64,000 nt of DNA from positions 124,001 through 188,000 of IMG/VR virus record IMGVR_UViG_3300022868_000009; one strand, given 5' to 3'. The notes under the pieces were generated by a model, which had not been told where the DNA came from, searched no databases, and saw nothing but the letters and a program-made list of their open reading frames with translations. The translations under genes and the position numbers were made by a program. Below are positions 3,581-59,675 of this stretch, in pieces (the first letter of the stretch is position 1; every line of letters begins with the position of its first letter).

Positions 3581-4636
3581 TTAAAATCCCCAATCATCAA
3601 AGTTTTCAAACTCATCTTTATTTTTTTGAATTGTCTGTTGTATTGAACCACTAAATAAACTATTTAATACCGATAATCTTTTATTAATATCTGGTAAACC
3701 TACTGGTTCTAAAAACCTATTAGCAATTGCCAAAAATGTTTTTTCAAATTGAGTATCATAATCTATCAATACTCTTTCTTTTTCAGTTATTTCATACGGA
3801 TGAAAACTTCTCATATAAGCAAACCTCTCTCCAAGAGTATGGTTACAAAAATACCATTTAACTCGACCACCTTTTAACAAATCATATTTAGTTTTAAACT
3901 CGCTATTTTTATTTAAAAGAAAATTATGTAAAGCGGCGGCTTTAACTGAAAAATGAGCACCTTTAACACAATTAACACCAATTTGATCATCAACTACTTT
4001 ATCTCTATAATTTGATAAAGAAGTCGTCATACTAATATCTTCAATATCAGAGGCTTTAAATTGATTTTTAAGATCTTTCATAATTTTTAAAACCTCACGT
4101 ATATTTAACGTATCAGGATTTTTAAATAAATAATTAATAAATTCCCAAACACCACCTTTCTGCTTTTGACCTCTAACAAATATTGGTGTTGAAGACCTTA
4201 CAATATCTACACCTTTTGGAAAAAAATGTTCCATATCTTCATAAAAAATACCATCTTCCCAAACCACATTATTAATATAATGTTTCTTTTCAAGATGCAT
4301 GGCAGATTTATTAACAGTTTCTAATTCAAAATCATGAATATTTTTAACACCATACTTTTTAGCATATTGGTCTAAATATTTAACAAATGTGTCTTTTACA
4401 TACAATCTATCAAGGGTTAATATAAATTCAAGAGGATCACCTTCATAATCACAAGAGTCCATTATTGGTTGAAACGACAAATATAAACTATTATGAACTA
4501 ATAAATTATTAGCAATAAAGGTGTGAGTTTCATCATCAACTTCTATATCATAAACATATTCTTCTTCTCCAAAATTACCTACACATTCAATTTCTGAAAT
4601 TTCAACCAATTCATAATTATAACATATATTTTCCAT
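3581..4636 (-). CDS. Family B DNA polymerase C-terminal fragment fused to C-intein (49 aa, 4490..4636)
   Basis: YVYDIEV...FIANNLLVHN/SLY intein C-terminus, then KKHY and KGVDIVRSSTP PolB motifs. Confidence 0.9.
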   Translation of the reverse strand: MENICYNYELVEISEIECVGNFGEEEYVYDIEVDDETHTFIANNLLVHNSLYLSFQPIMDSCDYEGDPLEFILTLDRLYVKDTFVKYLDQYAKKYGVKNIHDFELETVNKSAMHLEKKHYINNVVWEDGIFYEDMEHFFPKGVDIVRSSTPIFVRGQKQKGGVWEFINYLFKNPDTLNIREVLKIMKDLKNQFKASDIEDISMTTSLSNYRDKVVDDQIGVNCVKGAHFSVKAAALHNFLLNKNSEFKTKYDLLKGGRVKWYFCNHTLGERFAYMRSFHPYEITEKERVLIDYDTQFEKTFLAIANRFLEPVGLPDINKRLSVLNSLFSGSIQQTIQKNKDEFENFDDWGF

Positions 4637-5789
4637 ATATTTCTTTTATTAATTTTTTAATACTCGGCAAATCACTTTCCCAAATAACAATGATATCTAT
4701 ATCATGATCCTTTTTTAGAAGTGATAATTTTTCTTCATCTTTTTTCCATATATCAGATGATAATTCATTACTAAACGGATTAGGTTTATCATCATGTTTA
4801 AATTTTTTAGGATTAGCATGAAAAACATCACCATTATATTCTATACCTAAATTTAATTCTTTTATATAATAATCTATAAAAACATATCGACCAGTAGATA
4901 ACATCTTACCATATTCTTTATTATTACATTTTTCATAAAAATATGTTTTAAAATCTTTTGATATTTCTTTATCTAATTTCCACAAATAATCCTGTGAAGA
5001 TTTTGATGCTGGATAATTCCTTATCTTAGAATAAAATTGTTGTAATTTAATTAAAGCGTCATTTTTACCGTATATTCTTATATAATTAGATAAATTGTGT
5101 GCTTTTTGTTTACACAATTCATCCCATTTTAATTTACCATGTTTTAACACATAATATTCTTTACTTTTTGTTTCAATTTGTTTTTTAACATAATTTTCAT
5201 ATTTTATTTTACCGAATTTTTTGCCATGTTTTTTTATCAAATTTTCTAATGTAACAGATCTTGATTTATTATAATTATCAAAATCATCTTTATTCCAACC
5301 ATGTTTTTCTTTTTTATATTCAAATAAATTTGATTTTCGTTGTTTATCACAATAGATTTCCCATCTTTCAACTCCTTCATTTACACCATATTTTAAAATA
5401 TAATTTTCCTTTGTTCTAACGTAGTTTAAATTCTTCCATATTTCAGATTCTTTTTCTGGTATATTAAATGCATATGTTGTTATCTTATTTACCATGTTAA
5501 ATATTCTAGCCCTATTCTTATTTTTATACTCAGGATATTTTTCTATCAAACAATCTTCACAAACACTTAAATTATAAATTTTACCATTCACCGATTTAAA
5601 TGTTTTATAAGATTTGCCTTTGTATCCAAATTTTCTTACAGTAAATACAGAATTATAATAAAATATTGGACCATTACAAATTAAACACTTAACAGAATTT
5701 TTATCATAAAAATCTTGAATTTCCTCATAATCATCTTTATTGATATTAAATTTAAATTTTTGTAATTTATTTTTCATATGGTGACACAT
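4617..5789 (-). CDS. Free-standing endonuclease (Vsr/PD-(D/E)XK-like C-terminal domain) between split-intein halves
   Basis: CxxC, KYG/KHG repeats, FIDYY..IEYNGDVFHANP..IVIWES. Confidence 0.8.
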   Translation of the reverse strand: MCHHMKNKLQKFKFNINKDDYEEIQDFYDKNSVKCLICNGPIFYYNSVFTVRKFGYKGKSYKTFKSVNGKIYNLSVCEDCLIEKYPEYKNKNRARIFNMVNKITTYAFNIPEKESEIWKNLNYVRTKENYILKYGVNEGVERWEIYCDKQRKSNLFEYKKEKHGWNKDDFDNYNKSRSVTLENLIKKHGKKFGKIKYENYVKKQIETKSKEYYVLKHGKLKWDELCKQKAHNLSNYIRIYGKNDALIKLQQFYSKIRNYPASKSSQDYLWKLDKEISKDFKTYFYEKCNNKEYGKMLSTGRYVFIDYYIKELNLGIEYNGDVFHANPKKFKHDDKPNPFSNELSSDIWKKDEEKLSLLKKDHDIDIIVIWESDLPSIKKLIKEIYGKYML

Positions 5790-6780
5790 CTTTATCTCTA
5801 TATATCCTTAAAATTTTATCAGTTATTTTCATTTCAGAAGGTTTTACTTCAAATTGTTCACCGTCTCTAAAAACTATCATAGAATGATCATTTGTTACGA
5901 AAATTTCCTCACCTGTTTTTATTTTAATTTTCCATTTTTGTTTAATAACCTTATGTCTTATAACTCTTTTTACTGGTGCATAATATAGCTTTTTTTCAGA
6001 ACACCAATTTAAGATTTTTTCACCAGTTTTAACACTCTCATGTCCCTTCAACGTACTCTCACCCACATTTAATGTATTTTCGTTGTAAAATTCTTCTATT
6101 GTCTTTTCACCATTATTTGTGATAATTACACTATCCTTGTCAACCGAATCCGTATCACCATAAACACACAATTCATCTTTATGAAATTTCGTACTATAAG
6201 TTTCTTTATCATCTTTTGTCATTTCTGTAAAACCTGGCATTTCTTCTCTTTCAGAAATCACAGAACCATCAATTTGTTCAACATTATCTACAAAATTATG
6301 AAGATGTCTCTTATATTTAATATTATAAATTTTATCTTCAATTTTAATAGAATCTTTGTGTTCTTCTAATTTATCAATATCAACATTCCATTCTATTAGT
6401 AAATCATGTAAAGTATTATTACCCCTTCCAATTATTCTATTTCTATTATTCATCATATACCAAACATCACTATCATCAGTTACAATATACGTAAATTCTA
6501 ATAACTTATGAACTTCAATATCATGATACCATTCTTCATAAAAATATTTTTCTATTTTATTTAACATAAATAAAATTACATCTCTACCATGTGCTGTAAT
6601 AGCATTTGCAATATCTTTATTAGATACTACAAATTTAGGGTGAGCAAAAGCACCATAAGTTCCGTTAATCACTAATTTTAGTGCCAATTGCATTGCTTTA
6701 TTGTAGTTATATTCTGATTCTACTTTTGCGATTTTCTTTTTAAGATTCTCGATTTTTTTCTTTTTCTCGGCGAACGTCAT
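5767..6780 (-). CDS. Family B DNA polymerase middle fragment (motif B to YGDTD) fused to N-intein (126 aa, 5770..6147)
   Basis: KLVINGTYGAF (motif B), YGDTD/SVDKDS intein start, VTNDH block B. Confidence 0.9.
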   Translation of the reverse strand: MTFAEKKKKIENLKKKIAKVESEYNYNKAMQLALKLVINGTYGAFAHPKFVVSNKDIANAITAHGRDVILFMLNKIEKYFYEEWYHDIEVHKLLEFTYIVTDDSDVWYMMNNRNRIIGRGNNTLHDLLIEWNVDIDKLEEHKDSIKIEDKIYNIKYKRHLHNFVDNVEQIDGSVISEREEMPGFTEMTKDDKETYSTKFHKDELCVYGDTDSVDKDSVIITNNGEKTIEEFYNENTLNVGESTLKGHESVKTGEKILNWCSEKKLYYAPVKRVIRHKVIKQKWKIKIKTGEEIFVTNDHSMIVFRDGEQFEVKPSEMKITDKILRIYRDKDVSPYEK

Positions 6781-6816: not shown

Positions 6817-8418
6817 TTAAAAGTTTAATGAATATTTTATATTACCACTGTTATATATTCTATAAATACCTCTTTCTAACATTATTTCGTGTTCACTTTT
6901 ATTAGGATCATAACCTTCTCTAACTAAAACATCTTTTCTAAAATTATACCTATATAATCGTTTTAAATTTTTACCATCAAAATAATGATAATTCGGTTTT
7001 GTGTTATGAACGAATTTAAATTCCAATTTTTCATATAGATTTCCTTTACTCCAGCTTCTATCAGCATAAGTAATTATTTCACCCGGATTATAATTTCTGA
7101 TAAAATATTTAAATAATTTTGATGCACCACCAACAACATTAATATTTAATTTGTTACAAAACCTTAACAATTCATACTCTCCTTCTATACTTTTAGACCC
7201 CATTAATTTTCTTTTTTTACCAAAGGTCATTAGAGATACTAATTCATCTTCATAATAAAGACCTATTTTAACAAAAGAACCAACAAAACCTTGAAGATGA
7301 TTATCATTTAAAAAATTTCTAATCAATTTATTATCTATTATCTCTTTAATTATAGTTTTTCTAGCATATATTTTATCAGACTTTCCAATCATATTTAATA
7401 TTCTAGACTTGACAATTTCTTTTTGGTTAAACCATTCATCTTCCCAAATATGTATTAATTGAACACCTTTTTTTAAACAATTGTTTGTTTTATTTAAATG
7501 ATAATCCTTATCCTTATAAAGTTCTGAATGCCAATACAAACCATTAAATTCAAAAGCTAGATTTAAATCTGGTAAATAAATATCTAATTCTTTTCCATCC
7601 AAGATCTCTTTATCACTTGTTATTATTTCATAATTATAGTTTTCTTTAATAAAATTCACGATTTCTAATTCTTTACCTGAAATCTTATAATCTAATGTAT
7701 TACAAACTGTGCATAATATTGTTTTTTGTATTTTATATCTTTGATATAAATTTTTGCTATTAATATTAAAATAATGATCTTTACCACAATCACATTTAAC
7801 ATCTATCGTTCGATCAGTATTTAAAATATAATCTGTTATATTATATTCCGATAATTTAAATAATATATCTTTTTCCCACCTTTTATATGTTAACAAATAA
7901 TATGATTCTGTTTGTGTATACCATTCTTTTCCATATTTTTCAAGATTAGTTTTCTTTATTTTCTCTCTAATTTCATATGAAGAAAGTATCTCTTCCACGC
8001 CATATTTTTCAAGATTTGTTTTTTTAATTTTTTCTTTGACATCTTTATCTAATAATGTACAAGTAACGCCATATTTCTTGAGGTTTGTTTGTTTTGTTTT
8101 ATCTTTTATTTCTTTTATGTGTTGTGGATTTTCAACGCCATATTTTTCTAACATTGTATTTTTTCTTTTAATAGAAGAACATTTTTTACAACTATAAAAA
8201 CCTTGTCTTTTTTTATTTTCTAAATATTTATGATATCTTAGTTGTTTTTCATCTGAACATATCTCACAAACAGCAATTACTTTAACATGTGAATTTTGTG
8301 GCAAATCATTAACATCAATGTCCAATGTTTCACCATTATTACAAACATAATTTTTAGATCTATAATATGTTACATTACGATATGTTATATTAACATCAAT
8401 TCTACTATTTTTAATCAT
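6817..8418 (-). CDS. Putative homing endonuclease (KYG repeats plus Vsr-like domain)
   Basis: TNLEKYG repeats, ELDIYLPDLNLAFEFNGLYWHSE, IHIWEDEW; paralog of 57954..59675. Confidence 0.75.
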   Translation of the reverse strand: MIKNSRIDVNITYRNVTYYRSKNYVCNNGETLDIDVNDLPQNSHVKVIAVCEICSDEKQLRYHKYLENKKRQGFYSCKKCSSIKRKNTMLEKYGVENPQHIKEIKDKTKQTNLKKYGVTCTLLDKDVKEKIKKTNLEKYGVEEILSSYEIREKIKKTNLEKYGKEWYTQTESYYLLTYKRWEKDILFKLSEYNITDYILNTDRTIDVKCDCGKDHYFNINSKNLYQRYKIQKTILCTVCNTLDYKISGKELEIVNFIKENYNYEIITSDKEILDGKELDIYLPDLNLAFEFNGLYWHSELYKDKDYHLNKTNNCLKKGVQLIHIWEDEWFNQKEIVKSRILNMIGKSDKIYARKTIIKEIIDNKLIRNFLNDNHLQGFVGSFVKIGLYYEDELVSLMTFGKKRKLMGSKSIEGEYELLRFCNKLNINVVGGASKLFKYFIRNYNPGEIITYADRSWSKGNLYEKLEFKFVHNTKPNYHYFDGKNLKRLYRYNFRKDVLVREGYDPNKSEHEIMLERGIYRIYNSGNIKYSLNF

Positions 8419-10668: not shown

Positions 10669-11655
10669 ATGAAAAAAGAAATATCTGATTATATTATATG
10701 TAAAGTATGTGGTGAAAAAGTAAGAAGAATTTATGGTGCACATTTAAAGAAACATGGATTAACAAGCAAAGAATATAAAGAAATGTTTCCAGATGAACCA
10801 TTAACAACAAAAAATGATAATTTAAAAACAAGTAAAAATTCAGGATTGCATATGAAACAAGAAAAATATAAGAAAATGTTTTCTGAAAAAATAAAAGGAG
10901 AAAAAAATCCAAATCATAAAACAAAAACTACTGAAAAAGACAGGAAATCAAGAAGTCCATTTTCAAAAGATTTTAAAAAATATAAAAATGAACAAGAATT
11001 AATAGAATTTAGAGAAGAAGCATTAAAAGATAGAAAACACACAACTAGATTAGATTATTATTTAAAACAAGGGCTTGATATGGAAACATCCAAAAAAATG
11101 TTGAAAAAAAGACAAACAACATTTACTTTAGATATTTGTGTAGAAAAATATGGCAAAGAAAAAGGTATAGTAATTTGGAAAAATAGACAAGTAAAATGGC
11201 AAGAAAATTTATTATCTAATGGTAATTTAAAATGTGGATATTCTAAAATAAGTCAAGAACTGTTCTATGGTATATTAGAATATTATGATTATGAAAATAA
11301 AAAAGATATTTATTTTGCTACAAAAAATCAAGAATTTTTCATATCCAAAAAAGGAACAGACACAGATCCACGAATTTTTTTACAATACGATTTTTGTGAC
11401 ATGAAATCAAAAAAGATAATAGAATATAACGGTGATAGATATCATGCAAATCCGAAGATATATGAATCAAAAGACAATCCACATCCATTTAGAAAAAATA
11501 TAACATCACAAGAAATTTGGAATAAAGATAAAGAGAAAACAAGGATAGCGCAACAGGAAGGTTTTGATGTTTTAACTATATGGGATAGTGATTATAAAAA
11601 AGAAAAAGAAAAAATTATTCAGAAATGTCTGAATTTTTTAAATTTAAAAATATGA
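10669..11655 (+). CDS. Free-standing endonuclease between split-intein halves
   Basis: CKVC..HLKKHG zinc finger; YDFCD..IIEYNGDRYHANP..LTIWDS; paralog of 4617..5789. Confidence 0.8.
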   Translation: MKKEISDYIICKVCGEKVRRIYGAHLKKHGLTSKEYKEMFPDEPLTTKNDNLKTSKNSGLHMKQEKYKKMFSEKIKGEKNPNHKTKTTEKDRKSRSPFSKDFKKYKNEQELIEFREEALKDRKHTTRLDYYLKQGLDMETSKKMLKKRQTTFTLDICVEKYGKEKGIVIWKNRQVKWQENLLSNGNLKCGYSKISQELFYGILEYYDYENKKDIYFATKNQEFFISKKGTDTDPRIFLQYDFCDMKSKKIIEYNGDRYHANPKIYESKDNPHPFRKNITSQEIWNKDKEKTRIAQQEGFDVLTIWDSDYKKEKEKIIQKCLNFLNLKI

Positions 11656-13952
11656 AAGTAACAATTAAACATATTATTATATTTCTCATTCAATTAATTG
11701 AATATTATGAATTTAGAAATATTGATAAAGATGAAAATAAACCAAATAAAAAGATAGTAGATATTATACCAATAAATAAATATGTAAAAACTGACTATGG
11801 TAATACACCTGTTTCTGAAATAGTTAGAACAATACCATTACAGAGATATGAATTATTATTAGAAAATGATGATAAAATTGAATGCGCAGACACACATATA
11901 ATATATTGTAAAAATCATACTCCAAAATTAGTTTTAGATTTAACCGAAAATGATGAAGTTATTACAATATCTGGACTATCAAAAATCAAACATTTTAAAA
12001 AACTAAGAGGAAAATTATCAATGTTTGATTTAACTATTGATGGACCAGAACCAAGTTATTACACAAATAATATATTATCACATAATACAGTATCAGCTGC
12101 AATTGTTATTCTTCATTTTGTATTATTTAATAATGATAAAGGTTGTATGGTTGTTGCAAATAAAGGAACTACAGTTATAGAAATTATTGATAAAATAAAA
12201 TCTATTTATAAACATTTACCATTCTTCTTAAAAAGAGGTGTAATTAACTGGAATCAAAAATCTATAACATTTGATAATGGTTGTAGAATAAAATCAGAAA
12301 ATAGAACTAAAGAACCTGCTATTGGTTTTACAATCGACCTTTTGTATTTTGATGAGTTTGCAAAAGTACCATCTAACATAATTAGACCCTATTATGGATC
12401 CGCTGTTCCAACAGTATCATCAATCAAAAATTCAAAAATTATAATAACATCTACCCCAGATGGTTATAATTTATTCTACGAATTATTAACTGGTGCAGAA
12501 AAAGCCGAAGGAGATAAAGATAAGAACACATATGAATCCATGAGAGTATATTGGTGGCAAGTTAAAGGTAGAAGAGATACTAAACTTTATTTTAATAAAA
12601 AAATGTTATCTAAATATGGTGTTAAGGAAAGAGAAATTCTTCAAGAACTAGAATTATATGGATACACAATAACAAAAAGAAAAGAGGGTGAAAAATTAGT
12701 TCATATCATAGCATTTGATGAAGATAACGAAAAAACACACTTAGAAAAAATAAGATCAATAAGATTATTTGATAAATTACCTTTGGTTGAAATATGTAAT
12801 GTTACTAATTGGCAAGAAGAAGAAACTAAATTAGTTGGTGGTGAATCAATCTTCAAACAAGAATATGATATTCAATTTATAACAGGTGATAAGTTATTAT
12901 TTGATAGTATAACATTAGAAAGAATACAGAATGCTACAGAAAAATTTGAACATATTCCAATTCCTAATTTTGATAAAAGATTAGCCTTACCTTATGATAA
13001 ATTAGAATTTATTAAAGATAGACCAGATTTATTTGAGATAGAAGAAGTTAAAAAATATCATATGATGTTTTCTATTGATTTAGCTGAAGGTTTAGGTAGT
13101 GATTACACAGTTTTAAATATATTTAGATTATTACCAAAAGACAAAGTTATAATAGAAAAGAACAAACAGAAATTTACAAACATTTATGACTATTTCAAAC
13201 TAGAACAAGTTGGATTTTTTCATTGTAATTACTATTCAGTTAAAGAATTTGCACATTTATTGTATATGATTGCATATGAAATGTTTGATCCTGAAAAATG
13301 TAAAATATCTTTAGAATATAATACTTATGGTGGAGAATTATTAGCACATTTACCAAATGTATTTGAAGGTGATAATGATTATTTTGATGCCACATTTATT
13401 AGAACAAAACACAACCAAAATGATAAATATAGAAAAAAAGGTTTAAAAATAACAAAAGGCAATAAAGTTAAACTTGTTATAAAAGATTATCAAGATGCTA
13501 TTAAAAAACATAGTATAATAGTACATAATGCATTAAATATACTTGAAATGAAAGTTTTTAGTAAAAGAGAAACACCTTCTGGTGATTTTACATACCAATC
13601 AGAAACAGGAAATGATGATACCGTAATGTCATTAGTTAATTTAAGTGCTAGTTTAACATCAGTCCAATTCAAAGATATTGTTGATGATTATATTGCAACA
13701 GTACTAAATGATGAAGATAGAAGAATGATTGAAACAAATGTATCAGAATTTAGTGATGAAACTGTAGATTATAGTTCAGCTATATCAAGTTACAAAAAAG
13801 TATATCTAGATAAATCTAAAAAACCTGGAGTTGGAAATAGTTTTAAATCAAGTCCGTTCGAACAACCAAATCCTTACCAAAAAAAAGGAAATCCATTTGA
13901 AAATAATCCATTTGGTAAAGGTACAACTGGTGTTAGTCCTTTCGGAAAATAA
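11625..13952 (+). CDS. Terminase large subunit C-terminal fragment fused to long C-intein (probable start 11652; intein ends 12086)
   Basis: CADTH block B, YYTNNILSHN/TVSAA; Walker B LLYFDEFA, ITSTPDG, nuclease DLAEGLGSD and NDD. Confidence 0.9.
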   Translation: MSEFFKFKNMKVTIKHIIIFLIQLIEYYEFRNIDKDENKPNKKIVDIIPINKYVKTDYGNTPVSEIVRTIPLQRYELLLENDDKIECADTHIIYCKNHTPKLVLDLTENDEVITISGLSKIKHFKKLRGKLSMFDLTIDGPEPSYYTNNILSHNTVSAAIVILHFVLFNNDKGCMVVANKGTTVIEIIDKIKSIYKHLPFFLKRGVINWNQKSITFDNGCRIKSENRTKEPAIGFTIDLLYFDEFAKVPSNIIRPYYGSAVPTVSSIKNSKIIITSTPDGYNLFYELLTGAEKAEGDKDKNTYESMRVYWWQVKGRRDTKLYFNKKMLSKYGVKEREILQELELYGYTITKRKEGEKLVHIIAFDEDNEKTHLEKIRSIRLFDKLPLVEICNVTNWQEEETKLVGGESIFKQEYDIQFITGDKLLFDSITLERIQNATEKFEHIPIPNFDKRLALPYDKLEFIKDRPDLFEIEEVKKYHMMFSIDLAEGLGSDYTVLNIFRLLPKDKVIIEKNKQKFTNIYDYFKLEQVGFFHCNYYSVKEFAHLLYMIAYEMFDPEKCKISLEYNTYGGELLAHLPNVFEGDNDYFDATFIRTKHNQNDKYRKKGLKITKGNKVKLVIKDYQDAIKKHSIIVHNALNILEMKVFSKRETPSGDFTYQSETGNDDTVMSLVNLSASLTSVQFKDIVDDYIATVLNDEDRRMIETNVSEFSDETVDYSSAISSYKKVYLDKSKKPGVGNSFKSSPFEQPNPYQKKGNPFENNPFGKGTTGVSPFGK

Positions 13953-16628: not shown

Positions 16629-16700
16629 GGTCCCGTAGCTCAGTGGAAGAGCAGAAGCTTCTAACCCTTTGTGTCGCTGGTTCAAATCCAGCCGGGACCG
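16629..16700 (+). tRNA. tRNA with CUA anticodon in canonical register (putative amber suppressor; Arg-TCT only if read out of register)
   Basis: GGTCCCG/CGGGACC, GCTC/GAGC, A26, GAAGC-TTCTAAC-CCTTT, GTGTC, GCTGG-TTCAAAT-CCAGC, G73. Confidence 0.75.
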
Positions 16701-17003
16701 CTATAACCTCATTATATTGGTTGTTCTATTATACTTAATAGTTTCTTTTTGTCTATTTACCCAATTAATTAATTCAGACTTAATTTCTTTATATCTTTCT
16801 TCTGTCATTTTATCATCATAAAACTCACCTTGTTCAATTTGATGATCATCAGATAACCAAAAATCGGAAACTAACTCATTTAATGTCTCCTCTAATTGTC
16901 TAAAATTAGTTTCAACACCATTCAAATAATATTTCTTTTGATTTACAGCCCATTCTTCATCTTCTTGAGTTACATTTTCATTATATTTCTTTAAATGTCT
17001 CAT
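16701..17003 (-). CDS. Putative capsid-internal protein
   Basis: MRHLKKYNE N-terminus. Confidence 0.6.
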   Translation of the reverse strand: MRHLKKYNENVTQEDEEWAVNQKKYYLNGVETNFRQLEETLNELVSDFWLSDDHQIEQGEFYDDKMTEERYKEIKSELINWVNRQKETIKYNRTTNIMRL

Positions 17004-27410: not shown

Positions 27411-29567
27411 ATGGAAGAAAATACAGAAAATACAAATCAACCAAAATACCCTTGGTTAGCAAAATTTGCAATAAATTTAAATGATTATGCATCTAAAGGT
27501 AAATTAAAACCAGTAATAGGTAGAGACGAAGAAATTCGTAGAATATTACAAATACTTTCCAGAAAAACTAAAAATAATCCAATAGTTATAGGTGAATCAG
27601 GTGTTGGAAAAACATCTGTTGTTGAAGCATTAGCCCAAAGAATAGTTGATGGTGATGTACCTGAAAATCTTAAAGATAAAGTAATAGCATCTTTAGATTT
27701 AGCTACATTAGTTGCTGGTGCAAAATATAAAGGTGAATTCGAAGAAAGAATACAAACCATTGTAAAAGAAATAATTGAATCTAATGGTCAAATTATACTT
27801 TTTATTGATGAAATTCACACATTAGTTGGTACAGGTGGTGGAAATGGTGCAATGGATGCTGCAGGTATTTTAAAACCTATATTATCAAGAGGTGAAATTA
27901 GAGCAATTGGTGCAACAACTATTGATGAATATAAAAAATCAATTGAGCAAGATAGAGCATTAGATAGAAGATTTCAAACAGTTATGATTGATGAGCCTGA
28001 TAAATTTCAATCAATTTCAATTTTAAGAGGTATTAAAGATAGTTTTGAAAAACATCATGATGTTAGAATAGTAGATAGTGCTATTATAAGTGCTGTAGAA
28101 TTATCAATAAGATATGTATCTGATAGATTTTTACCAGATAAGGCTATTGATTTATTAGATGAAGCTTGTTCTAAATTAAGATTAGAAATAAATTCTGTAC
28201 CAGGTGAAATTGATGAAATATCTAGAAGAATTCAACAATTAGAAATTGAAAGAGAAGGTTTAAGAATGGAAGGAAACAATAAAAAAGTTTCAAAAATTAC
28301 ATCTGAAATAGATTCATTAACTGAAAGCTTAAAAACTTTTAATTTACAATGGAACAAAGAAATAGAACTTGTTGATAATATTAAAATATTAAAAAAAGAT
28401 TTAGCTGGATATAATAATGATATCGAAAAATTTAGAAATGAAGCATATTACGAACATGTAGCAAAATTACAATATGGTATAATACCAAAAGTAGAACTAG
28501 AAATAAAAGAACTAGAAGATAAACTTAAAGAAATACAAAAAGGTGTCCAACTTGTTGATGAAGAAGTTGATGGTGAAGATATAGCAGAAATTGTAGCAAA
28601 ATGGACTGGTATACCAGTTTCAAAAATGTTAAAATCTGAAAAAATAAAATTAGTAAATCTTGAAGATGAATTACATAAAAGAATTATTGGCCAAAATGAA
28701 GCTGTAACAGAATTATCAAACGCAGTAAGAAGAAGTAGATCCGGATTACAAGATACAAAAAAACCAATTGGTTCTTTTATTTTCTTAGGAACCACCGGAG
28801 TTGGTAAAACAGAAACAGCAAAAGCACTAGCTGAATATTTGTTTGATGATGAAAATGCAATGGTAAGAATTGATATGAGTGAATATATGGAAAGACATGC
28901 CGTAGCTAAATTAATCGGTCCCCCTCCAGGTTATATTGGTTATGAAGAAGGTGGTCAATTAACAGACCAGGTAAGAAGAAAACCTTATTCAGTAATTTTA
29001 TTTGATGAAATTGAAAAAGCTCACCCTGATACATTTAATACCTTATTACAAGTATTAGATGATGGTAGATTAACTGATAATAAAGGTAGAACTGTTGATT
29101 TTAAGAACACTATTATTATTATGACTTCTAATATTGGTTCTCATATTATTAGAGAAAATTTTGAAAAATTAACTGATGAAAATAGAGAAGAAGTTATTAA
29201 AAAAACCAATGATGAAGTAATGGAAGTTTTAAAAAATACTGTAAGACCAGAATTTTTAAATAGAATTGATGAAATTGTGACATTTCAACCATTAACAAGA
29301 GAAGAAATTAAAAAAATTGTAGTATTACAATTTAACTCAATCAAGAAAAGATTACCAGACGTTGAATTAGAATTAACAGAAAAAGCTCTTGATTATTTAA
29401 CATTAAAATCATATGATCCTCAATTTGGAGCTAGACCAGTTAAGAGAACATTACAAGATACAATTTTAGATGATTTATCAATGTCAATTTTAAAAGATGA
29501 AGTTAAAAAAGATGATGCTATTTTAATTGACTATGATGGTGAGAAAATAACATTTGACAATAAATAG
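27411..29567 (+). CDS. clpB: ClpB disaggregase lacking the N-terminal domain
   Basis: Two AAA+ modules (GESGVGKT, IDEIH; GTTGVGKT, FDEIEKAH), coiled-coil M domain, PPGYIGYEEGG. Confidence 0.92.
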   Translation: MEENTENTNQPKYPWLAKFAINLNDYASKGKLKPVIGRDEEIRRILQILSRKTKNNPIVIGESGVGKTSVVEALAQRIVDGDVPENLKDKVIASLDLATLVAGAKYKGEFEERIQTIVKEIIESNGQIILFIDEIHTLVGTGGGNGAMDAAGILKPILSRGEIRAIGATTIDEYKKSIEQDRALDRRFQTVMIDEPDKFQSISILRGIKDSFEKHHDVRIVDSAIISAVELSIRYVSDRFLPDKAIDLLDEACSKLRLEINSVPGEIDEISRRIQQLEIEREGLRMEGNNKKVSKITSEIDSLTESLKTFNLQWNKEIELVDNIKILKKDLAGYNNDIEKFRNEAYYEHVAKLQYGIIPKVELEIKELEDKLKEIQKGVQLVDEEVDGEDIAEIVAKWTGIPVSKMLKSEKIKLVNLEDELHKRIIGQNEAVTELSNAVRRSRSGLQDTKKPIGSFIFLGTTGVGKTETAKALAEYLFDDENAMVRIDMSEYMERHAVAKLIGPPPGYIGYEEGGQLTDQVRRKPYSVILFDEIEKAHPDTFNTLLQVLDDGRLTDNKGRTVDFKNTIIIMTSNIGSHIIRENFEKLTDENREEVIKKTNDEVMEVLKNTVRPEFLNRIDEIVTFQPLTREEIKKIVVLQFNSIKKRLPDVELELTEKALDYLTLKSYDPQFGARPVKRTLQDTILDDLSMSILKDEVKKDDAILIDYDGEKITFDNK

Positions 29568-29602: not shown

Positions 29603-30653
29603 ATGGCTTTTTTAATATATACAGATATGAAATATTTAAAAAAATATGAATCTTGGCAGAGTATGGTTGGCACTAAGTTAAATGTCGGTCTTAAAAAGCA
29701 TGTAGGTTTATATGATAAAGATCCAGAAACAGTAAAAGAATATTTTACAGAATTAAAAAATGATGAAAATTATAAAATACTAGACAAGAAGAGTAAAAAT
29801 GAATATTTAGAACAATATATGAAATACTTTTTGAGACATTTTAAAGAAAATTCTGAATATTCTGAATTAATAAAAGATGAAGTGTTTAAAGATATCTATC
29901 CTTCAATAATACGTAATGAAGTTGGTTACAATTACAAAAATCTAGATGAAGAAACATTGAAATACTTTATAGGATTTTCTGGTAAGAAAAATAAAGGTAT
30001 GTACTATTCACTAGAAAAATTAGCAAAAATTTTAAATACAAATCAATATAATGATGAAAGACAAAATTTTTTCATAGAACTGTATATAGATCAGTTAGTC
30101 TTATTTAAAAATGCAAATAAAAGTAAAGATTTATCTAGAATTATATACTCAAAAATATTTCAATTATTTACAGCAGGTAAAACAGGAAAAAACATGATTA
30201 AAATCACAGAAATGTTAGAAAAAAAAAGGAATTCTTACGAAAGAAATATCAAATTATGTTTTTAATTTAAATGGTAATTTGCGTTCAGATCCATTAGGAA
30301 TAACAGATTTTATCACGAGACCTGAATTTCTATCAAAGTTATCTGAATATTATGATGGTGATATAAATAATATCATAACTAAAAATATCTTACAAAGAAT
30401 CGGTTTTTATAATGCTAGTTTAAACTTCTCAAAAGGCACTTCATATGCTACTACAGGTCCTAATTACTATGATGTAGAAAAACTCGTTTCTGGTTTTTTG
30501 AAACAACCAGATTTTTCTCTAGAAGATTATATTGAAAAATTCATTGATGCTGACGAAGATAGATGGCGAAGTATAAGGAAAACGTATAAAACAGATAAAT
30601 TAAAAGAAAAATATAAATACTTTAGCGAAGCTGGTAAACTCGGATTATTTTAA
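29603..30653 (+). CDS. Probable single protein split by a frameshift in an A9 run (ORFs 29603..30265 and 30279..30653; probable start 29627)
   Basis: Skipping one A at 30219-30227 gives an open frame ...MLEKKGILTKEISNYVFNLNGNLRSDP... Confidence 0.65.
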
Positions 30654-31384
30654 GTATTTATATTATCAAGAAGTTCCTTTAAATATTTTTTCTTATTCGA
30701 TTTATATTCTTCTTCAATTATTCTAATTAATTTAATATTATTATCTAGACAATATTCATCTAACAATTTATCTAGATGAACAACCTTTTCATATTTTTCT
30801 GGTGTGCCTAATTTTTCATATAATTCTTTTGATCTATGCCAAATACCATCATATTCAATAAATAATTTCCTGTCAGAAAAAGTTATATCAACAGATTTAC
30901 TATCAATTTTATTAAATGTTATTATCCTATGTGATTTAACATTATGTTCACCATATATTTTTTTGAGATACTTTCTTATTTCACGTTCACCCTTCGAAGA
31001 ACATCTACTATTATTTGGTCCTCTTAAATTTTGAATACATTTTTCTCTATATTCTAAATCATTATTTAATTTATAAATAATTGATTTACTTATTTTATCT
31101 TTAGTTTCTTTACTATGTTCTCTCGTATTTGCACATGATCGACTACAAAAATATTTTTCTTTAATTGGAAATTTTTTAGATGGTTCTTTTACATTAAATT
31201 TAACACCACAATTATTACATATTACTTCATAATCAGTTACAACTCCTTGCTCATTTATCATTCTTTTGTGTCTGGCTTTAATAAGATTATCCTTTGAAGG
31301 TTTTTTATGTTTCCATCTTATGTGATTGGCTTTAATTTTAGCATTATCAAATTCTTCATCACAATATTCACAAGTATATTTCAT
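30650..31384 (-). CDS. Putative homing endonuclease (zinc finger plus Vsr-like domain)
   Basis: CEYC..H..H, FCSRSCAN, VDI..FIEYDGIWH. Confidence 0.75.
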   Translation of the reverse strand: MKYTCEYCDEEFDNAKIKANHIRWKHKKPSKDNLIKARHKRMINEQGVVTDYEVICNNCGVKFNVKEPSKKFPIKEKYFCSRSCANTREHSKETKDKISKSIIYKLNNDLEYREKCIQNLRGPNNSRCSSKGEREIRKYLKKIYGEHNVKSHRIITFNKIDSKSVDITFSDRKLFIEYDGIWHRSKELYEKLGTPEKYEKVVHLDKLLDEYCLDNNIKLIRIIEEEYKSNKKKYLKELLDNINT

Positions 31385-31455: not shown

Positions 31456-31483
31456 AAAAAAGCCACATAATGTGGCTTTTTTT
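31456..31483 (-). terminator. Terminator downstream of tmRNA
   Basis: aaaaaagccaca-taa-tgtggctttttt. Confidence 0.8.
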
Positions 31484-31485
31484 AG

Positions 31486-32062
31486 TGGAGCATTCGGGAT
31501 TCGCTTTTTTATCCAAAAATTTCTTAATGGCGTGGACTATATCATCAACCTAATTAGGTTGCCGGGCGCTCTAGGATGTATGTCATCTAGTCTCTGAACC
31601 TTCCATTTCTAAATTAATAGCTTGGCTGCTGATTGCCGTATCTTTTTTTAAAAGACTTAGGGTTCCAGCAATTCACCCAGTTTTTTCATTATATGTTACC
31701 ATATAAGGGGTCCGAATTTAAACCCGAGTTCACAACAAGTTCCAGTTCGCTTTCTACAGATATATTTTATTTTTTCACAAACAAACAAAATATTCAATCT
31801 TTTTTATTTCAGGAAAATTGAAAAATCCCTATTCTATTTTATTTAAATACGATTAGACGTGTCGTACTTGTTGATTTGTCTAGGCAACCACTTCCAGAGC
31901 AGATTCAACAACTGCTTCTTGTGAAGTTACAATATCAAAGATATCATCGGCTATTTCTATATTGCCATTTAAAATTGTTTATCTCCGTATTTTACTTGAA
32001 CTGAGATTTGACAAGATCTGCTTACTAACCTTCATCGAGAGTGTCTAAAGCCTGTATGCCCC
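31486..32062 (-). ncRNA. ssrA: tmRNA interrupted by a group I intron
   Basis: GGGGCAT/ATGCTCC-A acceptor stem with G3:U; T-arm TCGGG-TT^CGAAT-CCCGA after splicing; tag ORF GNIEIADDIFDIVTSQEAVVESALEVVA*. Confidence 0.9.
31504..31720 (-). mobile_element. ORF-less group I intron (217 nt) in the tmRNA T-loop
   Basis: P (AATTGCTGGAA), Q (AATCAGCAG), R (GTTCAGAGACTA), S (GATATAGTCC); internal guide ATTCG-GACCC; terminal G. Confidence 0.9.
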
Positions 32063-32069
32063 ATATTTT

Positions 32070-32222
32070 TTAAGAACGTTGTCTACCTTGACCTCTACCT
32101 ACACCTCTACCATTTCTTTGTCCATTATTAGAATTATTTTCTTCTGATGGTTTACATTTACCTAAACCTCTTCCTGTTCTAGGTCCGTTTTCATTTGGGC
32201 CTTTTCCATTTTGATTTGCCAT
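32070..32222 (-). CDS. Small Gly/Arg-rich DUF5320-like protein (absent from ORF track)
   Basis: MANQNGKGPNENGPRTGRGLGKCKP...GRGVGRGQGRQRS; preceded by TAATATATA. Confidence 0.65.
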   Translation of the reverse strand: MANQNGKGPNENGPRTGRGLGKCKPSEENNSNNGQRNGRGVGRGQGRQRS

Positions 32223-36757: not shown

Positions 36758-37681
36758 TCATATTATAAAGAATGATTCTAATATTTGTATAACATTTTCA
36801 TCATAACGTATTCTTATCAAATCGATATTGTTTTCTTTACAATATCGATTTTTTATTTCGTCATTGTTTTGTGTTTCTTTTAATTTTTTCCAAATTTTAT
36901 TTTCTCTAAAATGTTGTTCACCATCATATTCAATACACAAATTATGTTTTGGTAAATAAAAATCAAAAGGTAATGGTAACTTATTTCTACAATCTTTAAA
37001 TCTAAATTGAATTTCAAAGTCAATATTTCTATCTGATAGATAATTTCTTATTTGTGTTTCACCATGAGACATTCTACATATTGGACAACCTTTACCAGAT
37101 AGGTGGTTGTTCGGTGTTTGATTAAATGTACCATGTTTATCACATATAATTTCAACTTTTGAAATTGCATTTACATATTTAACATCACAATAATCATACA
37201 TATCACCGTGTTTTAATTTTGATTTTTTAATAAATTCTTTCGTATTAGATCTATATGTACCATCACACTTTGGACATCCAGAAACATAATGAGATCTTGG
37301 TTCTTGTTCAAAAACACCGTGTTCTGGACACACAATTTTAACCTTGGTTTTATTATTTTCATATTCAACTAAATCATAAATATATTTATCACCGTGTTTT
37401 AATTTTGATTTTCTAATAAAATCATCGTTTTTAAGAGAAAACAATTCGTTTTTATGTTCTGATGAACATTTTGTACAACCACCACCTCTCATATGGACAT
37501 CTGGTCTTTGTTTAAAAATTCCATGTTTATTGCAAATGATATTAACACATAAACTATTTTTAATATAATTCACTAAAGAATAATCATATCTAAGTCCATG
37601 TTTTTTGATAGATTTTTCAACAAAAATCATAGTATTATACTTTACAGGCATATTTTTAATAATTTTTAAGTAATGATTCAA
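36758..37681 (-). CDS. Putative homing endonuclease (three zinc repeats plus Vsr-like domain)
   Basis: Three KHGxxYDY..ICxxHGxFxQxP..H..GCxxC repeats; PFDFYLP..IEYDGEQH. Confidence 0.8.
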   Translation of the reverse strand: MNHYLKIIKNMPVKYNTMIFVEKSIKKHGLRYDYSLVNYIKNSLCVNIICNKHGIFKQRPDVHMRGGGCTKCSSEHKNELFSLKNDDFIRKSKLKHGDKYIYDLVEYENNKTKVKIVCPEHGVFEQEPRSHYVSGCPKCDGTYRSNTKEFIKKSKLKHGDMYDYCDVKYVNAISKVEIICDKHGTFNQTPNNHLSGKGCPICRMSHGETQIRNYLSDRNIDFEIQFRFKDCRNKLPLPFDFYLPKHNLCIEYDGEQHFRENKIWKKLKETQNNDEIKNRYCKENNIDLIRIRYDENVIQILESFFII

Positions 37682-57953: not shown

Positions 57954-59675
57954 TTAATTCAAAAAACCATTTTTTAAAATACCCCACTCAAAACATATAT
58001 GACCAGAATTATTTATTCTGTAAATACCCCTTTCTAACATTATATCATGCTCTGTTCTATTTGCATCATAACCATCTTTAACCAATGTTTGTTTTCTATA
58101 ATTATATCTATGCCTTCTAACACCATCAACTATGTAATGATAACCTGGTTTTGTTGTGTGACTCCTATTAAAATTTAAATTATCATAAAGATTGCCTTTA
58201 CTCCAACTTCTATCAGCATAAGAAACTATTTTTTTCGGATCATAATTTTTAATAAAATATTTAAACAATTTACTAGCACCACCAACAATATTTGTGTTTA
58301 ATTTGTTGCAAAACCTTAATAACTCAAAATCATATTTTTTAATAACACCTATACCCAATCTATTCTTACCAAACGTCATTAAAGAAACTAATTCATTTTC
58401 ATAATATAATCCTAATTTAACACTAGATCCAACAAAACCTTGTATATGATTATTATCTAAAAATTCTCTTATTAGTTTATTATCGTTAATTTCCTTTATT
58501 TGTGTTTTTCTAGCATAAATTTTATTTGGTGTTTTACCTAATTTATTTAATATCATTGATTTAACTATATTTTGTTTATATTTCCAATCATCTTCATAAA
58601 TATGGATTAATTGAATATCCTTTTCTTCACATTTTTCTGTTTTATTTAAATGATATCTATCAGATTTATATAATTCATTATGCCAATATAAACCATTAAA
58701 TTCAAAAGCTAATTTTAAATCTGGTAAATAAATGTCTAATTCTAATGGCTTTATTATATTTCTTTTATTATTTAAAATTGTTTTGTCATAATTCGATTTA
58801 ATATAATTTAAGAAATCAATTTCAAGTCCAGAAACTGATTTTAAAATAGGATTGCATTTAGTACATAACAAAGTATTAGATCTTCGTCTACTATTCAAAA
58901 GAACATAACTTATTTCAAATTCGTGTCCTTTTTCACACATCATTAAATATTTTTTTTCTTCTAAATTTAAACTTATTACATCATAATCTTCATAATATTT
59001 TAAATATTTATTCATGATTGTTTTTCTTAAACTTTTAATCATTCTGTCTTTTAAATCAATATTATGTAATGGTACAATCACACCATATTTTTCTTTCATT
59101 GTTCTTTGTCTTTTAATTTTAACTAAATCCAATTTTGAAACATTATCAACTCCATATTTACTCAAACACGTTTCTTTATATCTATTATAAATTTCAACTG
59201 ATTTTAATGGACTACTGACATTATAATTATCCTTTAGTGTTTTTAAAGATTTTTTATGAATTTCTTCATTTTGAATAGGTGAATTATAACCATATTTTTT
59301 AATATTAGTTTTGATAATCTTTTCTTTTACTAAAATATTTTCTGATGGTGTTTTTGTACCAAATTTATCTAAACATGTTTGCATTCTTTTATTTTTAACA
59401 TGATTACTTTTATTCATGCATTTCTTAGAACAAAAAGTATAATATCCAATATTAGAATTCTTAAATTTGACAAAATTACCACATTCACATATTACAATAT
59501 TTTTAATATCATTATACCAATGATAAACTTGTTGCTTAAATGGTAAATCATCTAAACCATTTTCAATTACATATTTTTGTATTTCTTCTAGTATACTAGT
59601 AAAATACTTTTCGAGATAATTCTTTCTGAACATTTTACCAGATGAATCTAGATTTTCACTAAAAATACTTTTCAT
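57954..59675 (-). CDS. Putative homing endonuclease between sheath and tube
   Basis: KYG repeats, ELDIYLPDLKLAFEFNGLYWH; paralog of 6817..8418. Confidence 0.75.
   Translation of the reverse strand: MKSIFSENLDSSGKMFRKNYLEKYFTSILEEIQKYVIENGLDDLPFKQQVYHWYNDIKNIVICECGNFVKFKNSNIGYYTFCSKKCMNKSNHVKNKRMQTCLDKFGTKTPSENILVKEKIIKTNIKKYGYNSPIQNEEIHKKSLKTLKDNYNVSSPLKSVEIYNRYKETCLSKYGVDNVSKLDLVKIKRQRTMKEKYGVIVPLHNIDLKDRMIKSLRKTIMNKYLKYYEDYDVISLNLEEKKYLMMCEKGHEFEISYVLLNSRRRSNTLLCTKCNPILKSVSGLEIDFLNYIKSNYDKTILNNKRNIIKPLELDIYLPDLKLAFEFNGLYWHNELYKSDRYHLNKTEKCEEKDIQLIHIYEDDWKYKQNIVKSMILNKLGKTPNKIYARKTQIKEINDNKLIREFLDNNHIQGFVGSSVKLGLYYENELVSLMTFGKNRLGIGVIKKYDFELLRFCNKLNTNIVGGASKLFKYFIKNYDPKKIVSYADRSWSKGNLYDNLNFNRSHTTKPGYHYIVDGVRRHRYNYRKQTLVKDGYDANRTEHDIMLERGIYRINNSGHICFEWGILKNGFLN

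What the first reader, a model, noticed from the sequence alone, without database searches (positions are those of the whole stretch)
31486..32062. Phage tmRNA interrupted by a group I intron in the T-loop
Seen: removing 31504-31720 restores TCGGG-TTCGAAT-CCCGA. The internal guide AUUCG-GACCC pairs with 5' exon GGGUU (U-G at the splice site, P1) and 3' exon CGAAU (P10). P, Q, R and S elements, P3 (CUGGGUG/CGCCCGG), P7 (GACUA/UAGUC) and the terminal G are all present. Established: a group I intron in the tmRNA T-loop is known from Clostridium botulinum. A phage-borne example is unusual, and gene finders may miss it.
Basis: partly seen in the sequence, partly recalled or inferred. Interest (0 to 1): 0.8.

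Follow-up and report, generated by a model that had tools for sequence, protein, structure and literature searches.

The report
Intron-split tmRNA gene in huge phage
A very large phage from a salt lake carries its own ribosome-rescue RNA (tmRNA) gene, split by a 217-base self-splicing-type intron in the T-loop; this is a known gene form in an unreported phage setting that standard gene finders miss.

Summary
On the minus strand, 32062-31486 is a pre-tmRNA. Bases 31720-31504 are a 217-nt group I intron (Rfam RF00028, 100.2 bits, E 1.5e-26). ARAGORN calls a tmRNA only after this stretch is removed. Only this junction has U at -1, a terminal G, and restores TCGGG-UUCGAAU-CCCGA.

The contig is a real phage: it encodes terminase, tail sheath and 35 tRNAs, is 344.6 kb long and about 48% complete. 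It also encodes SmpB and a CCA-adding-type enzyme.

The gene form is already known (883 intron-form tmRNAs, PMC11915505). This intron sits after loop base 2, the rare "position 3", not at position 7 as in Clostridium. It belongs to a different intron lineage.

The same architecture occurs in the 735-kb phage LR756501, in a 425-kb phage contig filed as an archaeal MAG, and in at least 21 metagenome contigs. A zinc-finger and endonuclease-like gene lies 39-102 nt beyond the tmRNA 3' end in many of these, in either orientation. It also lies next to intron-less tmRNAs.

Splicing itself is untested, because no RNA run was listed. Verdict: a new member of a known kind, of moderate interest.

The parts
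31486..32062 (-). Whole pre-tmRNA gene, 577 nt (360 nt after splicing)
   Evidence: ARAGORN calls a tmRNA after intron removal. The acceptor stem GGGGCAU/AUGCUCC has G3-U70 and discriminator A. It aligns with related tmRNAs.
31721..32062 (-). 5' exon: acceptor 5' strand, D-loop analogue, helix 2 5' strand, tag frame, 3' domain, 5' half of the T-stem and first two T-loop bases (…UCGGG-UU)
31880..31966 (-). Tag reading frame, read from the family-conserved UAAAU|GGC to a TAG stop: GNIEIADDIFDIVTSQEAVVESALEVVA. ARAGORN starts 6 codons later, at 31948.
   Evidence: ARAGORN. In the alignment of 10 related tmRNAs the GGC is conserved at this place and the frame is open from it in all of them.
31504..31720 (-). 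Group I intron, 217 nt, no ORF. It has P1-P9, a short P7.1 hairpin, the internal guide for P1 and P10, and terminal G at 31504.
   Evidence: RF00028 100.2 bits. The minimum-energy fold recovers P2-P6, P7.1, P8 and P9. 35 of 58 consensus pairs show compensatory changes in 10 relatives.
31486..31503 (-). 3' exon: last five T-loop bases, T-stem 3' strand, acceptor 3' strand and discriminator (CGAAU-CCCGA-AUGCUCC-A). CCA is not encoded; the next bases are CUA.
31456..31482 (-). Intrinsic terminator-like hairpin with a T run, directly after the tmRNA 3' end
30650..31384 (-). 244-aa ORF with two C2H2-like zinc fingers and a DUF559/Vsr-like C-terminal domain. It is a putative free-standing homing-type endonuclease tied to the tmRNA locus.
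   Evidence: phrog_559 at E 1.6e-11. DUF559 in 2 of 7 homologues at E 4.4e-05. AF2 model pLDDT 81, but only weak PDB fold matches. Homologues lie 39-102 nt from the tmRNA 3' end in L002, L212/L213/L242 and 13 of 39 metagenome loci, in either orientation, and also beside intron-less tmRNAs.

Best explanation
This is a functional intron-form tmRNA (ssrA) gene of a huge tailed phage.

The proposed pathway is as follows. The gene is transcribed as a 577-nt precursor. The 217-nt group I intron folds, with its guide pairing the 5' exon GGGUU (P1, U-G at the cleavage site) and the 3' exon CGAAU (P10). It then excises itself by the usual two guanosine-dependent transesterifications. Ligation recreates the T-arm UCGGG-UUCGAAU-CCCGA.

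The 360-nt product is then end-matured. CCA is not encoded, and the phage encodes a CCA-adding-family enzyme. The RNA is charged with alanine through its G3-U70 acceptor stem and is bound by the phage's own SmpB. It then rescues stalled ribosomes, adding a roughly 28-residue tag that ends in ...LEVVA.

Shown here: the intron model match, the splice-site geometry, restoration of the tRNA-like domain, covariation in relatives, the phage identity of the contig, and the presence of SmpB and of the CCA-enzyme gene.

Inferred: actual splicing, charging, tagging, and what happens to tagged proteins.
For: - Intron: RF00028 100.2 bits.
- tmRNA: ARAGORN calls it only after precise removal of 31504-31720.
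- Splice signals: U at -1 paired with G, terminal G, and a P10 complement.
- Covariation: RNAalifold on 10 homologous precursors gives compensatory changes in P2, P3, P4, P5, P6, P7.1, P8 and P9, and in the T-stem that spans the intron. P7 and the joining segments are invariant.
- Terminator directly after the 3' end.
- Phage identity: terminase large subunit, tail sheath, clamp loader and homing endonucleases in the window. The record has 35 tRNAs, 25% GC, and is an IMG/VR virus record.
- Partners: SmpB at 169.7 bits at G000:C1:82646-83065, and a PolyA_pol/CCA-enzyme family ORF.
- Recurrence: the same architecture occurs in LR756501 (735 kb, also with SmpB), in a 425-kb contig and in at least 21 metagenome loci.
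- Persistence: identical intron-containing DNA spans both junctions in contigs of three other salt-lake or marine runs.
Against: - There is no RNA evidence. No RNA run was listed, so splicing and expression are untested.
- The Rfam tmRNA model scores only 8.2 bits on the unspliced gene, and the spliced sequence could not be scored with Infernal here.
- Pseudoknots were not established for this very AT-rich RNA.
- The tag ends in VVA rather than the canonical LAA, and its stop is TAG while the genome carries two CUA-anticodon tRNAs.
- No ClpP or AlaRS was found in the held half of the genome.
- In the related 735-kb phage, the base before the 3' exon is A, not G.
Confidence: 0.85

Rival explanations
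1. The tmRNA gene has been inactivated by the intron. The intron no longer splices, or splices poorly, so the locus is a selfish-element graveyard rather than a working ribosome-rescue gene.
For: No RNA data exist. The tmRNA model score is weak. P9 in the window has two U-U mismatches and P7.1 is reduced to a 4-bp hairpin. The relative L002 lacks a terminal G.
Against: All catalytic-core segments are invariant or covary across 10 relatives. P1, P10, U at -1 and the terminal G are all in place. The tag frame is open, with a family-typical C-terminus. SmpB is kept in the genome. The identical allele persists in several samples taken in 2017-2019.
Confidence: 0.08
2. The locus is bacterial (host) DNA, for example a Bacteroidia ssrA gene, that was mis-assembled or mis-classified as viral. 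On this reading it is not phage-borne.
For: tmRNA genes are common prophage integration sites, so host copies can sit at provirus ends (general knowledge). PMC11915505 lists position-3 introns only under class Bacteroidia.
Against: The gene lies mid-contig, 155 kb into a 344.6-kb record of 25% GC. Terminase, tail sheath, 35 tRNAs and many homing endonucleases flank it on both sides. The same locus occurs in a second 348-kb viral record and in independent runs. A scan of 185,579 species-representative genomes with the intron-exon pattern returned only one true case. That case is a 425,361-bp contig of the same length as an IMG/VR phage contig.
Confidence: 0.03
3. The phage tmRNA does not mainly work as a classical degradation tagger. 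It may instead divert rescue, with its unusual ...EVVA tag sparing proteins from host ClpXP or handing them to the phage's Clp-like ATPase. In that case the intron and the adjacent endonuclease gene form a mobile cassette that spreads or protects the locus during co-infection.
For: Tags of this tmRNA clade end in EVVA, EVSVA or VLA rather than LAA. A ClpA/B-like AAA+ gene lies 1.9 kb away (27411-29567), and another lies near the tmRNA of L201. The endonuclease-like ORF is tightly linked to tmRNA genes in either orientation.
Against: No ClpP was found. The Clp-like gene is 365 kb away from the tmRNA in LR756501. The nuclease assignment is weak. The core homing site GGTTCGAATCC occurs uninterrupted in 9 of the phage's own tRNA genes, so any target would have to extend into tmRNA-specific flanks.
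Confidence: 0.25

Closest known systems
Intron-form tmRNA of Clostridium botulinum and other Bacillota (Williams 2002, cited as ref. 11 in PMC11915505; 883 unique sequences in 21 phyla)
   Same: A group I intron lies inside the T-loop of the tRNA-like domain. U at -1 and a terminal G give boundaries that rebuild the loop. Most such introns lack an endonuclease gene.
   Different: The subsite differs. Bacillota introns lie after loop base 6 (TTCGAT|T, position 7), as I re-derived from two Clostridia genomes. The window's lies after base 2 (TT|CGAAT, position 3). The intron lineage also differs: RF00028 gives 36-38 bits for the Clostridia ones and 100 bits here, and BLAST shares only a 35-nt core segment. 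The genome is a phage, not a bacterium.
Position-3 intron-form tmRNAs reported from class Bacteroidia (9 instances, PMC11915505, Supplementary Table 2)
   Same: The T-loop subsite is the same.
   Different: Those are filed as bacterial genomes or MAGs. In my scan of species-representative genomes, the only true hit was a huge-phage contig binned as an archaeon. Some of the nine may therefore also be phage contigs; this is an inference.
tmRNA and SmpB genes of huge phages (Al-Shayeb et al. 2020, PMC7162821) and other phage tmRNAs (e.g. mycobacteriophage DS6A, cited in PMC11915505)
   Same: These are phage-encoded trans-translation components in genomes with many tRNAs and translation factors.
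   Different: That survey assigned tmRNAs with ARAGORN, and its main text does not mention introns. ARAGORN cannot see this gene. The 735-kb genome from that study carries an intron-split tmRNA.
Phage group I introns in protein genes, and 'collaborative homing' with a free-standing endonuclease (cyanophage psbA intron plus F-CphI; T4 SegB in the tRNA gene region). Recalled from my own knowledge, not checked here.
   Same: The intron core is 71-81% identical to introns in phage psbA, thymidylate synthase and DNA polymerase genes. The intron has no ORF, and an endonuclease-like gene sits right beside the interrupted gene.
   Different: The target is a structural RNA gene. No cleavage activity or target site is known for the ORF. 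The ORF also accompanies intron-less tmRNAs.
[quoted passage not shown]
   Same: A self-splicing intron sits in a loop of a tRNA-shaped RNA, and its exon context gives precise mapping.
   Different: Those lie in anticodon loops. This one lies in the T-loop. One relative (L214) sits in the T-loop of an ordinary tRNA-Ala.

Membership tests
Group I intron (Rfam RF00028) | Covariance-model score above the curated gathering score | tested here: met
   100.2 bits against 50, E 1.5e-26, full model 1-253.
Group I intron (Rfam RF00028) | P1 formed by an internal guide with the 5' exon, a U-G wobble at the 5' splice site, and a terminal G before the 3' splice site | tested here: met
   GGGUU pairs with GACCC, with U31721 opposite G. 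G31504 is the last intron base. P10 is AUUCG/CGAAU.
Group I intron (Rfam RF00028) | Conserved core helices P3-P8 supported by covariation | tested here: met
   35 of 58 consensus pairs have compensatory changes in 10 relatives. P7 is invariant, which is uninformative.
Group I intron (Rfam RF00028) | Guanosine-dependent self-splicing | not testable with these tools
   No RNA run was listed. This needs an in vitro assay.
tmRNA (RF00023) | tRNA-Ala-like domain: 7-bp acceptor stem with G3-U70, and a T-arm with a 7-nt loop | tested here: met
   Present only after removal of 31504-31720.
tmRNA (RF00023) | Internal tag reading frame with a resume codon and a stop | tested here: met
   ARAGORN gives a 22-aa tag. 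The family alignment places the resume codon at the conserved GGC, giving 28 aa and a TAG stop.
tmRNA (RF00023) | Covariance-model score above gathering (47 bits), and pseudoknots PK1-PK4 | tested here: inconclusive
   The unspliced gene scores 8.2 bits. The spliced sequence could not be submitted to Infernal. Relatives L201 and L257 score 67.7 and 81.9 bits. Only helix 2 and the tRNA-like domain were recovered in the alignment fold.
tmRNA (RF00023) | SmpB partner encoded in the same genome | tested here: met
   PF01668 at 169.7 bits, a 152-aa open frame at G000:C1:82646-83065.
Intron-form tmRNA (PMC11915505) | Group I intron inside the T-loop, with boundaries that rebuild the loop, at one of subsites 2, 3, 7 or 8 | tested here: met
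   The subsite is after loop base 2, which is position 3. I calibrated the numbering on two Clostridia genes, which give position 7.
Intron-form tmRNA (PMC11915505) | Score of 150 bits or more with the authors' tmRNA_intron covariance model | not testable with these tools
   The model is in that paper's Supplementary File S1, which is not held here.
Free-standing homing endonuclease (ORF 30650-31384) | Recognisable nuclease domain | tested here: inconclusive
   phrog_559 at E 1.6e-11. DUF559 in 2 of 7 homologues. Foldseek PDB matches to Vsr-like nucleases reach only E 0.03-1.5.
Free-standing homing endonuclease (ORF 30650-31384) | Patchy presence right next to one target gene, in either orientation | tested here: met
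   It lies 39-102 nt from the tmRNA 3' end in 13 of 39 metagenome loci and in 3 huge-phage lineages, in both orientations.
Free-standing homing endonuclease (ORF 30650-31384) | Site-specific cleavage of the allele that lacks it | not testable with these tools
   This needs a biochemical assay.

The most novel reading that the evidence does not exclude
The rare 'position-3' class of intron-split tmRNA may be essentially a huge-phage trait, maintained by a mobile two-part system. One part is an ORF-less group I intron in the T-loop. The other is a separate zinc-finger and Vsr-like endonuclease gene parked at the tmRNA 3' end. On this reading the endonuclease cuts tmRNA loci of competing phages (or of the host) that lack the intron or a diverged T-arm. 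That would drive inheritance of the phage's own trans-translation module, a collaborative-homing system aimed at a structural RNA gene. The same intron has also reached the T-loop of a tRNA-Ala.
Probability: 0.25. Interest if true: 0.7.

Novelty: new member of a known kind. Interest (0 to 1): 0.5.

Why it matters
- Surveys of phage translation genes that rely on ARAGORN or default Rfam filters miss intron-split tmRNAs. This includes the one in the largest published phage genome, so phage-encoded ribosome rescue is under-counted.
- The result links the rare T-loop subsite 3 to huge phages. It also suggests that some 'bacterial' or 'archaeal' tmRNA records are mis-binned phage contigs.
- The tight pairing of tmRNA genes with a mobile endonuclease-like gene gives a concrete, testable case of selfish elements shaping a structural RNA locus.

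Tried and rejected
1. A 14-mer scan of viral contigs for the tmRNA 5' motif returned only chance-level hits and was abandoned.

2. I looked for a natural intron-less allele.
   - Read laying on four DNA runs showed no joint skipping the intron, and identical contigs span both junctions.
   - The exact predicted ligated-exon 30-mer is absent from viral contigs and metagenome contigs.

3. RNA evidence: no RNA run was listed.

4. TAG recoding would make the tag's TAG stop readable, given the two CUA-anticodon tRNAs. I rejected it. 15 of 193 long ORFs end in TAG with no long in-frame continuation, and recoding TAG adds little ORF coverage.

5. ClpP and AlaRS were not found in the held 344 kb.

6. 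Fold search of the endonuclease-like ORF gave no match at E 0.001 or better. A PDB sequence profile found only the zinc fingers.

8. The idea that the intron shields the bare T-loop core from the neighbouring nuclease is weakened. The phage's own tRNA genes carry that core uninterrupted 9 times.

9. Of 70 viral loci sharing the intron core 19-mer, only the near-identical sister contig (L054) reconstitutes a tmRNA T-arm. For the other 33 that gave any T-arm-like pairing, I judged the pairing to be chance.

Full report
**What is there**

The feature lies on the minus strand. Read 5' to 3', the stretch 32062-31486 begins with GGGGCAU and ends with AUGCUCCA. Together these form a 7-bp acceptor stem with a G3-U70 pair and discriminator A.

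ARAGORN finds no tmRNA in the window or in the unspliced region. After 31504-31720 is deleted it calls a 360-nt tmRNA with a tRNA-like domain and a tag frame.

Rfam's group I intron model matches 31731-31513 at 100.2 bits (gathering score 50, E 1.5e-26). It does so only with lax filters or in the own-genome search. The whole-window scan at gathering thresholds missed it. The tmRNA model gives 8.2 bits on the unspliced gene.

**The junction**

The 5' exon ends in UCGGG-UU and the 3' exon begins with CGAAU-CCCGA. Joining them gives a 5-bp T-stem and the loop UUCGAAU.

- The guide sequence GACCC pairs with exon GGGUU, putting a U-G wobble at the cleavage site.
- The adjacent AUUCG is the exact complement of the first five 3'-exon bases (P10).
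- The last intron base is G.

In a 9 x 9 grid of shifted deletions, ARAGORN called a tmRNA only when about 217 nt were removed at this place. One of 200 random 217-nt deletions also gave a call.

**Intron anatomy and comparative support**

P2, P3, P4, P5, P6, a short P7.1, P8 and P9 are recovered by minimum-energy folding of the window sequence alone. That fold is no more stable than shuffled sequences (z -1.55). P7 (GACUA/UAGUC) forms a pseudoknot with P3, so it cannot appear in such folds. It is present and invariant.

I collected nine other precursors with an intron at the same subsite: eight tmRNAs and one tRNA-Ala. In their alignment with the window, RNAalifold finds compensatory changes at 35 of 58 pairs. 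These cover P2, P3, P4, P5, P6, P7.1, P8 and P9, and also the T-stem whose two strands lie on either side of the intron.

The intron has no ORF. Its core is 71-81% identical to introns in phage protein genes (psbA, thymidylate synthase, DNA polymerase) and 83% identical over 99 nt to the intron of LR756501.

**The tmRNA body**

An alignment of ten spliced or intron-less relatives keeps these features:

- the acceptor stem;
- the D-loop analogue;
- helix 2 (GCAGAU paired with AUCUGU, just before the conserved GUAG);
- a conserved UAAAU|GGC ahead of the tag;
- the T-arm.

The frame is open from that GGC in all ten. For the window this gives GNIEIADDIFDIVTSQEAVVESALEVVA, six codons longer than ARAGORN's choice. 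I regard GGC as the more likely resume codon, but this is an inference.

Tags of this clade end in EVVA, EVSVA, VLA or MAA rather than LAA. Pseudoknots were not established.

**The genome is a phage**

- The window is G000:C1:124001-188000 of a 344,634-bp IMG/VR virus record with 25% GC. CheckV rates it about 48% complete, so the full genome may be near 0.7 Mb, a rough estimate.
- The window encodes a terminase large subunit (11625-13952), a tail sheath (59760-63638), a clamp loader, DNA polymerase pieces and several homing endonucleases.
- The record has 35 tRNA genes.
- It encodes SmpB (169.7 bits, full length with the C-terminal tail) and a CCA-adding-family enzyme. The latter is relevant because the gene does not encode CCA.
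- No ClpP or AlaRS was found in the held part.
- Source runs are salt-lake metagenomes. Contigs from three other runs carry identical intron-exon junctions.

**Relation to what is known**

[quoted passage not shown] Position 7 is the original Clostridium botulinum type and by far the commonest. Position 3 has nine instances, all filed under class Bacteroidia.

I checked the numbering on two Clostridia genomes. Their introns lie after loop base 6 (TTCGAT|T), which is position 7. The window's intron, after base 2, is therefore at position 3.

The Clostridia introns score only 36-38 bits with RF00028. They share just a 35-nt core segment with the window intron. The window's intron is therefore a separate invasion from the phage intron pool, not a relative of the Clostridium one.

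Huge phages are known to encode tmRNA and SmpB (PMC7162821). That study used ARAGORN, and its main text does not mention introns. I found no paper in the held library that describes an intron-split phage tmRNA. This is absence from that library, not proof that none exists.

**How common it is**

The same architecture is present in:

- a 348-kb sister record, L054;
- the 735-kb phage LR756501, which also has SmpB;
- a 425,361-bp contig rated 97% complete. GenBank holds a contig of the same length and with the same tmRNA, labelled as a 'Candidatus Pacearchaeota' MAG. This points to a mis-binned phage;
- several 13-49 kb viral fragments rated 12-21% complete;

A scan of 185,579 species-representative genomes with the same intron-exon pattern gave no true case other than the mis-binned phage contig. 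The pattern is stringent, so this does not exclude diverged bacterial copies.

**A linked gene**

The ORF 30650-31384, just past the tmRNA terminator, has two C2H2-like zinc fingers and a C-terminal region with a conserved EYDG.WH motif.

- It matches a PHROG annotated as HNH endonuclease (E 1.6e-11).
- Two of seven homologues match DUF559 (E 4.4e-05).
- The AlphaFold model (pLDDT 81) gives only weak matches to Vsr-like and related nucleases.

Homologues lie 39-102 nt beyond the tmRNA 3' end in LR756501 (47% identity), in the 425-kb phage (36%) and in 13 of 39 metagenome loci. They occur in either orientation. They also lie beside intron-less tmRNAs whose T-loops are often non-canonical.

This pattern fits a free-standing homing-type endonuclease tied to the tmRNA locus. 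It may cooperate with the ORF-less intron. The activity and the target are unknown. The bare T-loop core occurs uninterrupted in nine of the phage's own tRNA genes, so any target would have to extend beyond that core.

**Verdict**

The object is a new, phage-borne member of the known intron-form tmRNA class, at the rare subsite 3.

- Confidence that it is a working, self-splicing intron-form tmRNA gene: about 0.85.
- Main gap: no RNA or biochemical evidence of splicing.
- Interest: moderate. The added value lies in the recurrence in the largest phages, the annotation blind spot, the mis-binning clue and the linked endonuclease-like gene.

Noticed in passing
L214:472-724 (IMGVR_UViG_3300009068_004973): An ordinary tRNA-Ala(UGC) gene is split in its T-loop by the same intron type at the same subsite (TT|CGAAT). 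ARAGORN finds the tRNA only after the 223-nt intron (RF00028, 92 bits) is removed. The preprint I read on tRNA group I introns reports them only in anticodon loops.
   Followed up: partly
L242 (JBBACR010000001.1) and L213 (IMGVR_UViG_3300035208_004923): A 425,361-bp contig labelled as a 'Candidatus Pacearchaeota archaeon' MAG has the same length as an IMG/VR phage contig rated 97% complete. It carries the same intron-split tmRNA as L212 and the same endonuclease-like ORF as L213 (L213 itself holds only the 3' end of the tmRNA). It is probably a huge phage mis-binned into an archaeal MAG. This bears on reports of tmRNA genes in archaeal MAGs.
   Followed up: partly
window 16629-16701 (+) and G000:C1:112614-112688: The phage has two tRNAs with a CUA (amber-reading) anticodon, yet TAG does not look recoded. 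15 of 193 long ORFs end in TAG with no long continuation. The tmRNA tag frame itself stops at TAG, so suppression would lengthen the tag by 9 residues.
   Followed up: partly
window 27411-29567 (+); L201:2647-4698: A ClpA/B-like double AAA+ ATPase (phrog_4871, E 1.6e-247) lies 1.9 kb from the tmRNA. A similar gene lies 2.7 kb from the intron-split tmRNA of L201. In LR756501 it is far from the tmRNA. No ClpP was found in G000.
   Followed up: partly
L002:1737-1745 (LR756501.1): In the 735-kb phage the base before the 3' exon CGAAU is A, not G. P1, P10 and the core are otherwise intact. No alternative G gives a 7-nt T-loop.
   Followed up: partly
window 32070-32222 (-): A 50-aa DUF5320 ORF ends 8 nt before the mature tmRNA 5' end. 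A short motif (GTTCTT, then an A/T-rich run, then TAT) directly precedes the 5' GGGG in the window and in L002, L195, L196 and L252, with a one-base variant in L216. It may be a promoter or processing signal.
   Followed up: no
window 6817-8418 (-), 36758-37681 (-), 57954-59675 (-); 3581-6780 (-): Three strong homing or HNH endonuclease genes lie in the window. One of them (6817-8418) lies next to three consecutive ORFs at 3581-6780, one of which matches DNA polymerase families. That gene region may be invaded or split.
   Followed up: no
window 11625-13952 (+): The terminase large-subunit ORF has 775 aa, but the PHROG matches cover only parts of it (residues 150-284 and 155-511). It may hold an insertion such as an intein or an extra domain.
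   Followed up: no
G000 and G002 (record of L054): Two records of 344.6 and 348.2 kb, each rated about 48-49% complete, share this locus identically. Only G000 has SmpB. They may be overlapping halves of one genome of about 0.7 Mb.
   Followed up: no
L309 (metagenome contig Ga0138256_10008651): An intron-split tmRNA at the same subsite has an 866-nt intron, long enough to hold an endonuclease gene.
   Followed up: no
L002, L267, L290, L333, L359: Long tags of several of these tmRNAs share an internal motif, AEDMMSIPTS or a close variant. This suggests a conserved function beyond the C-terminal degradation signal.
   Followed up: no
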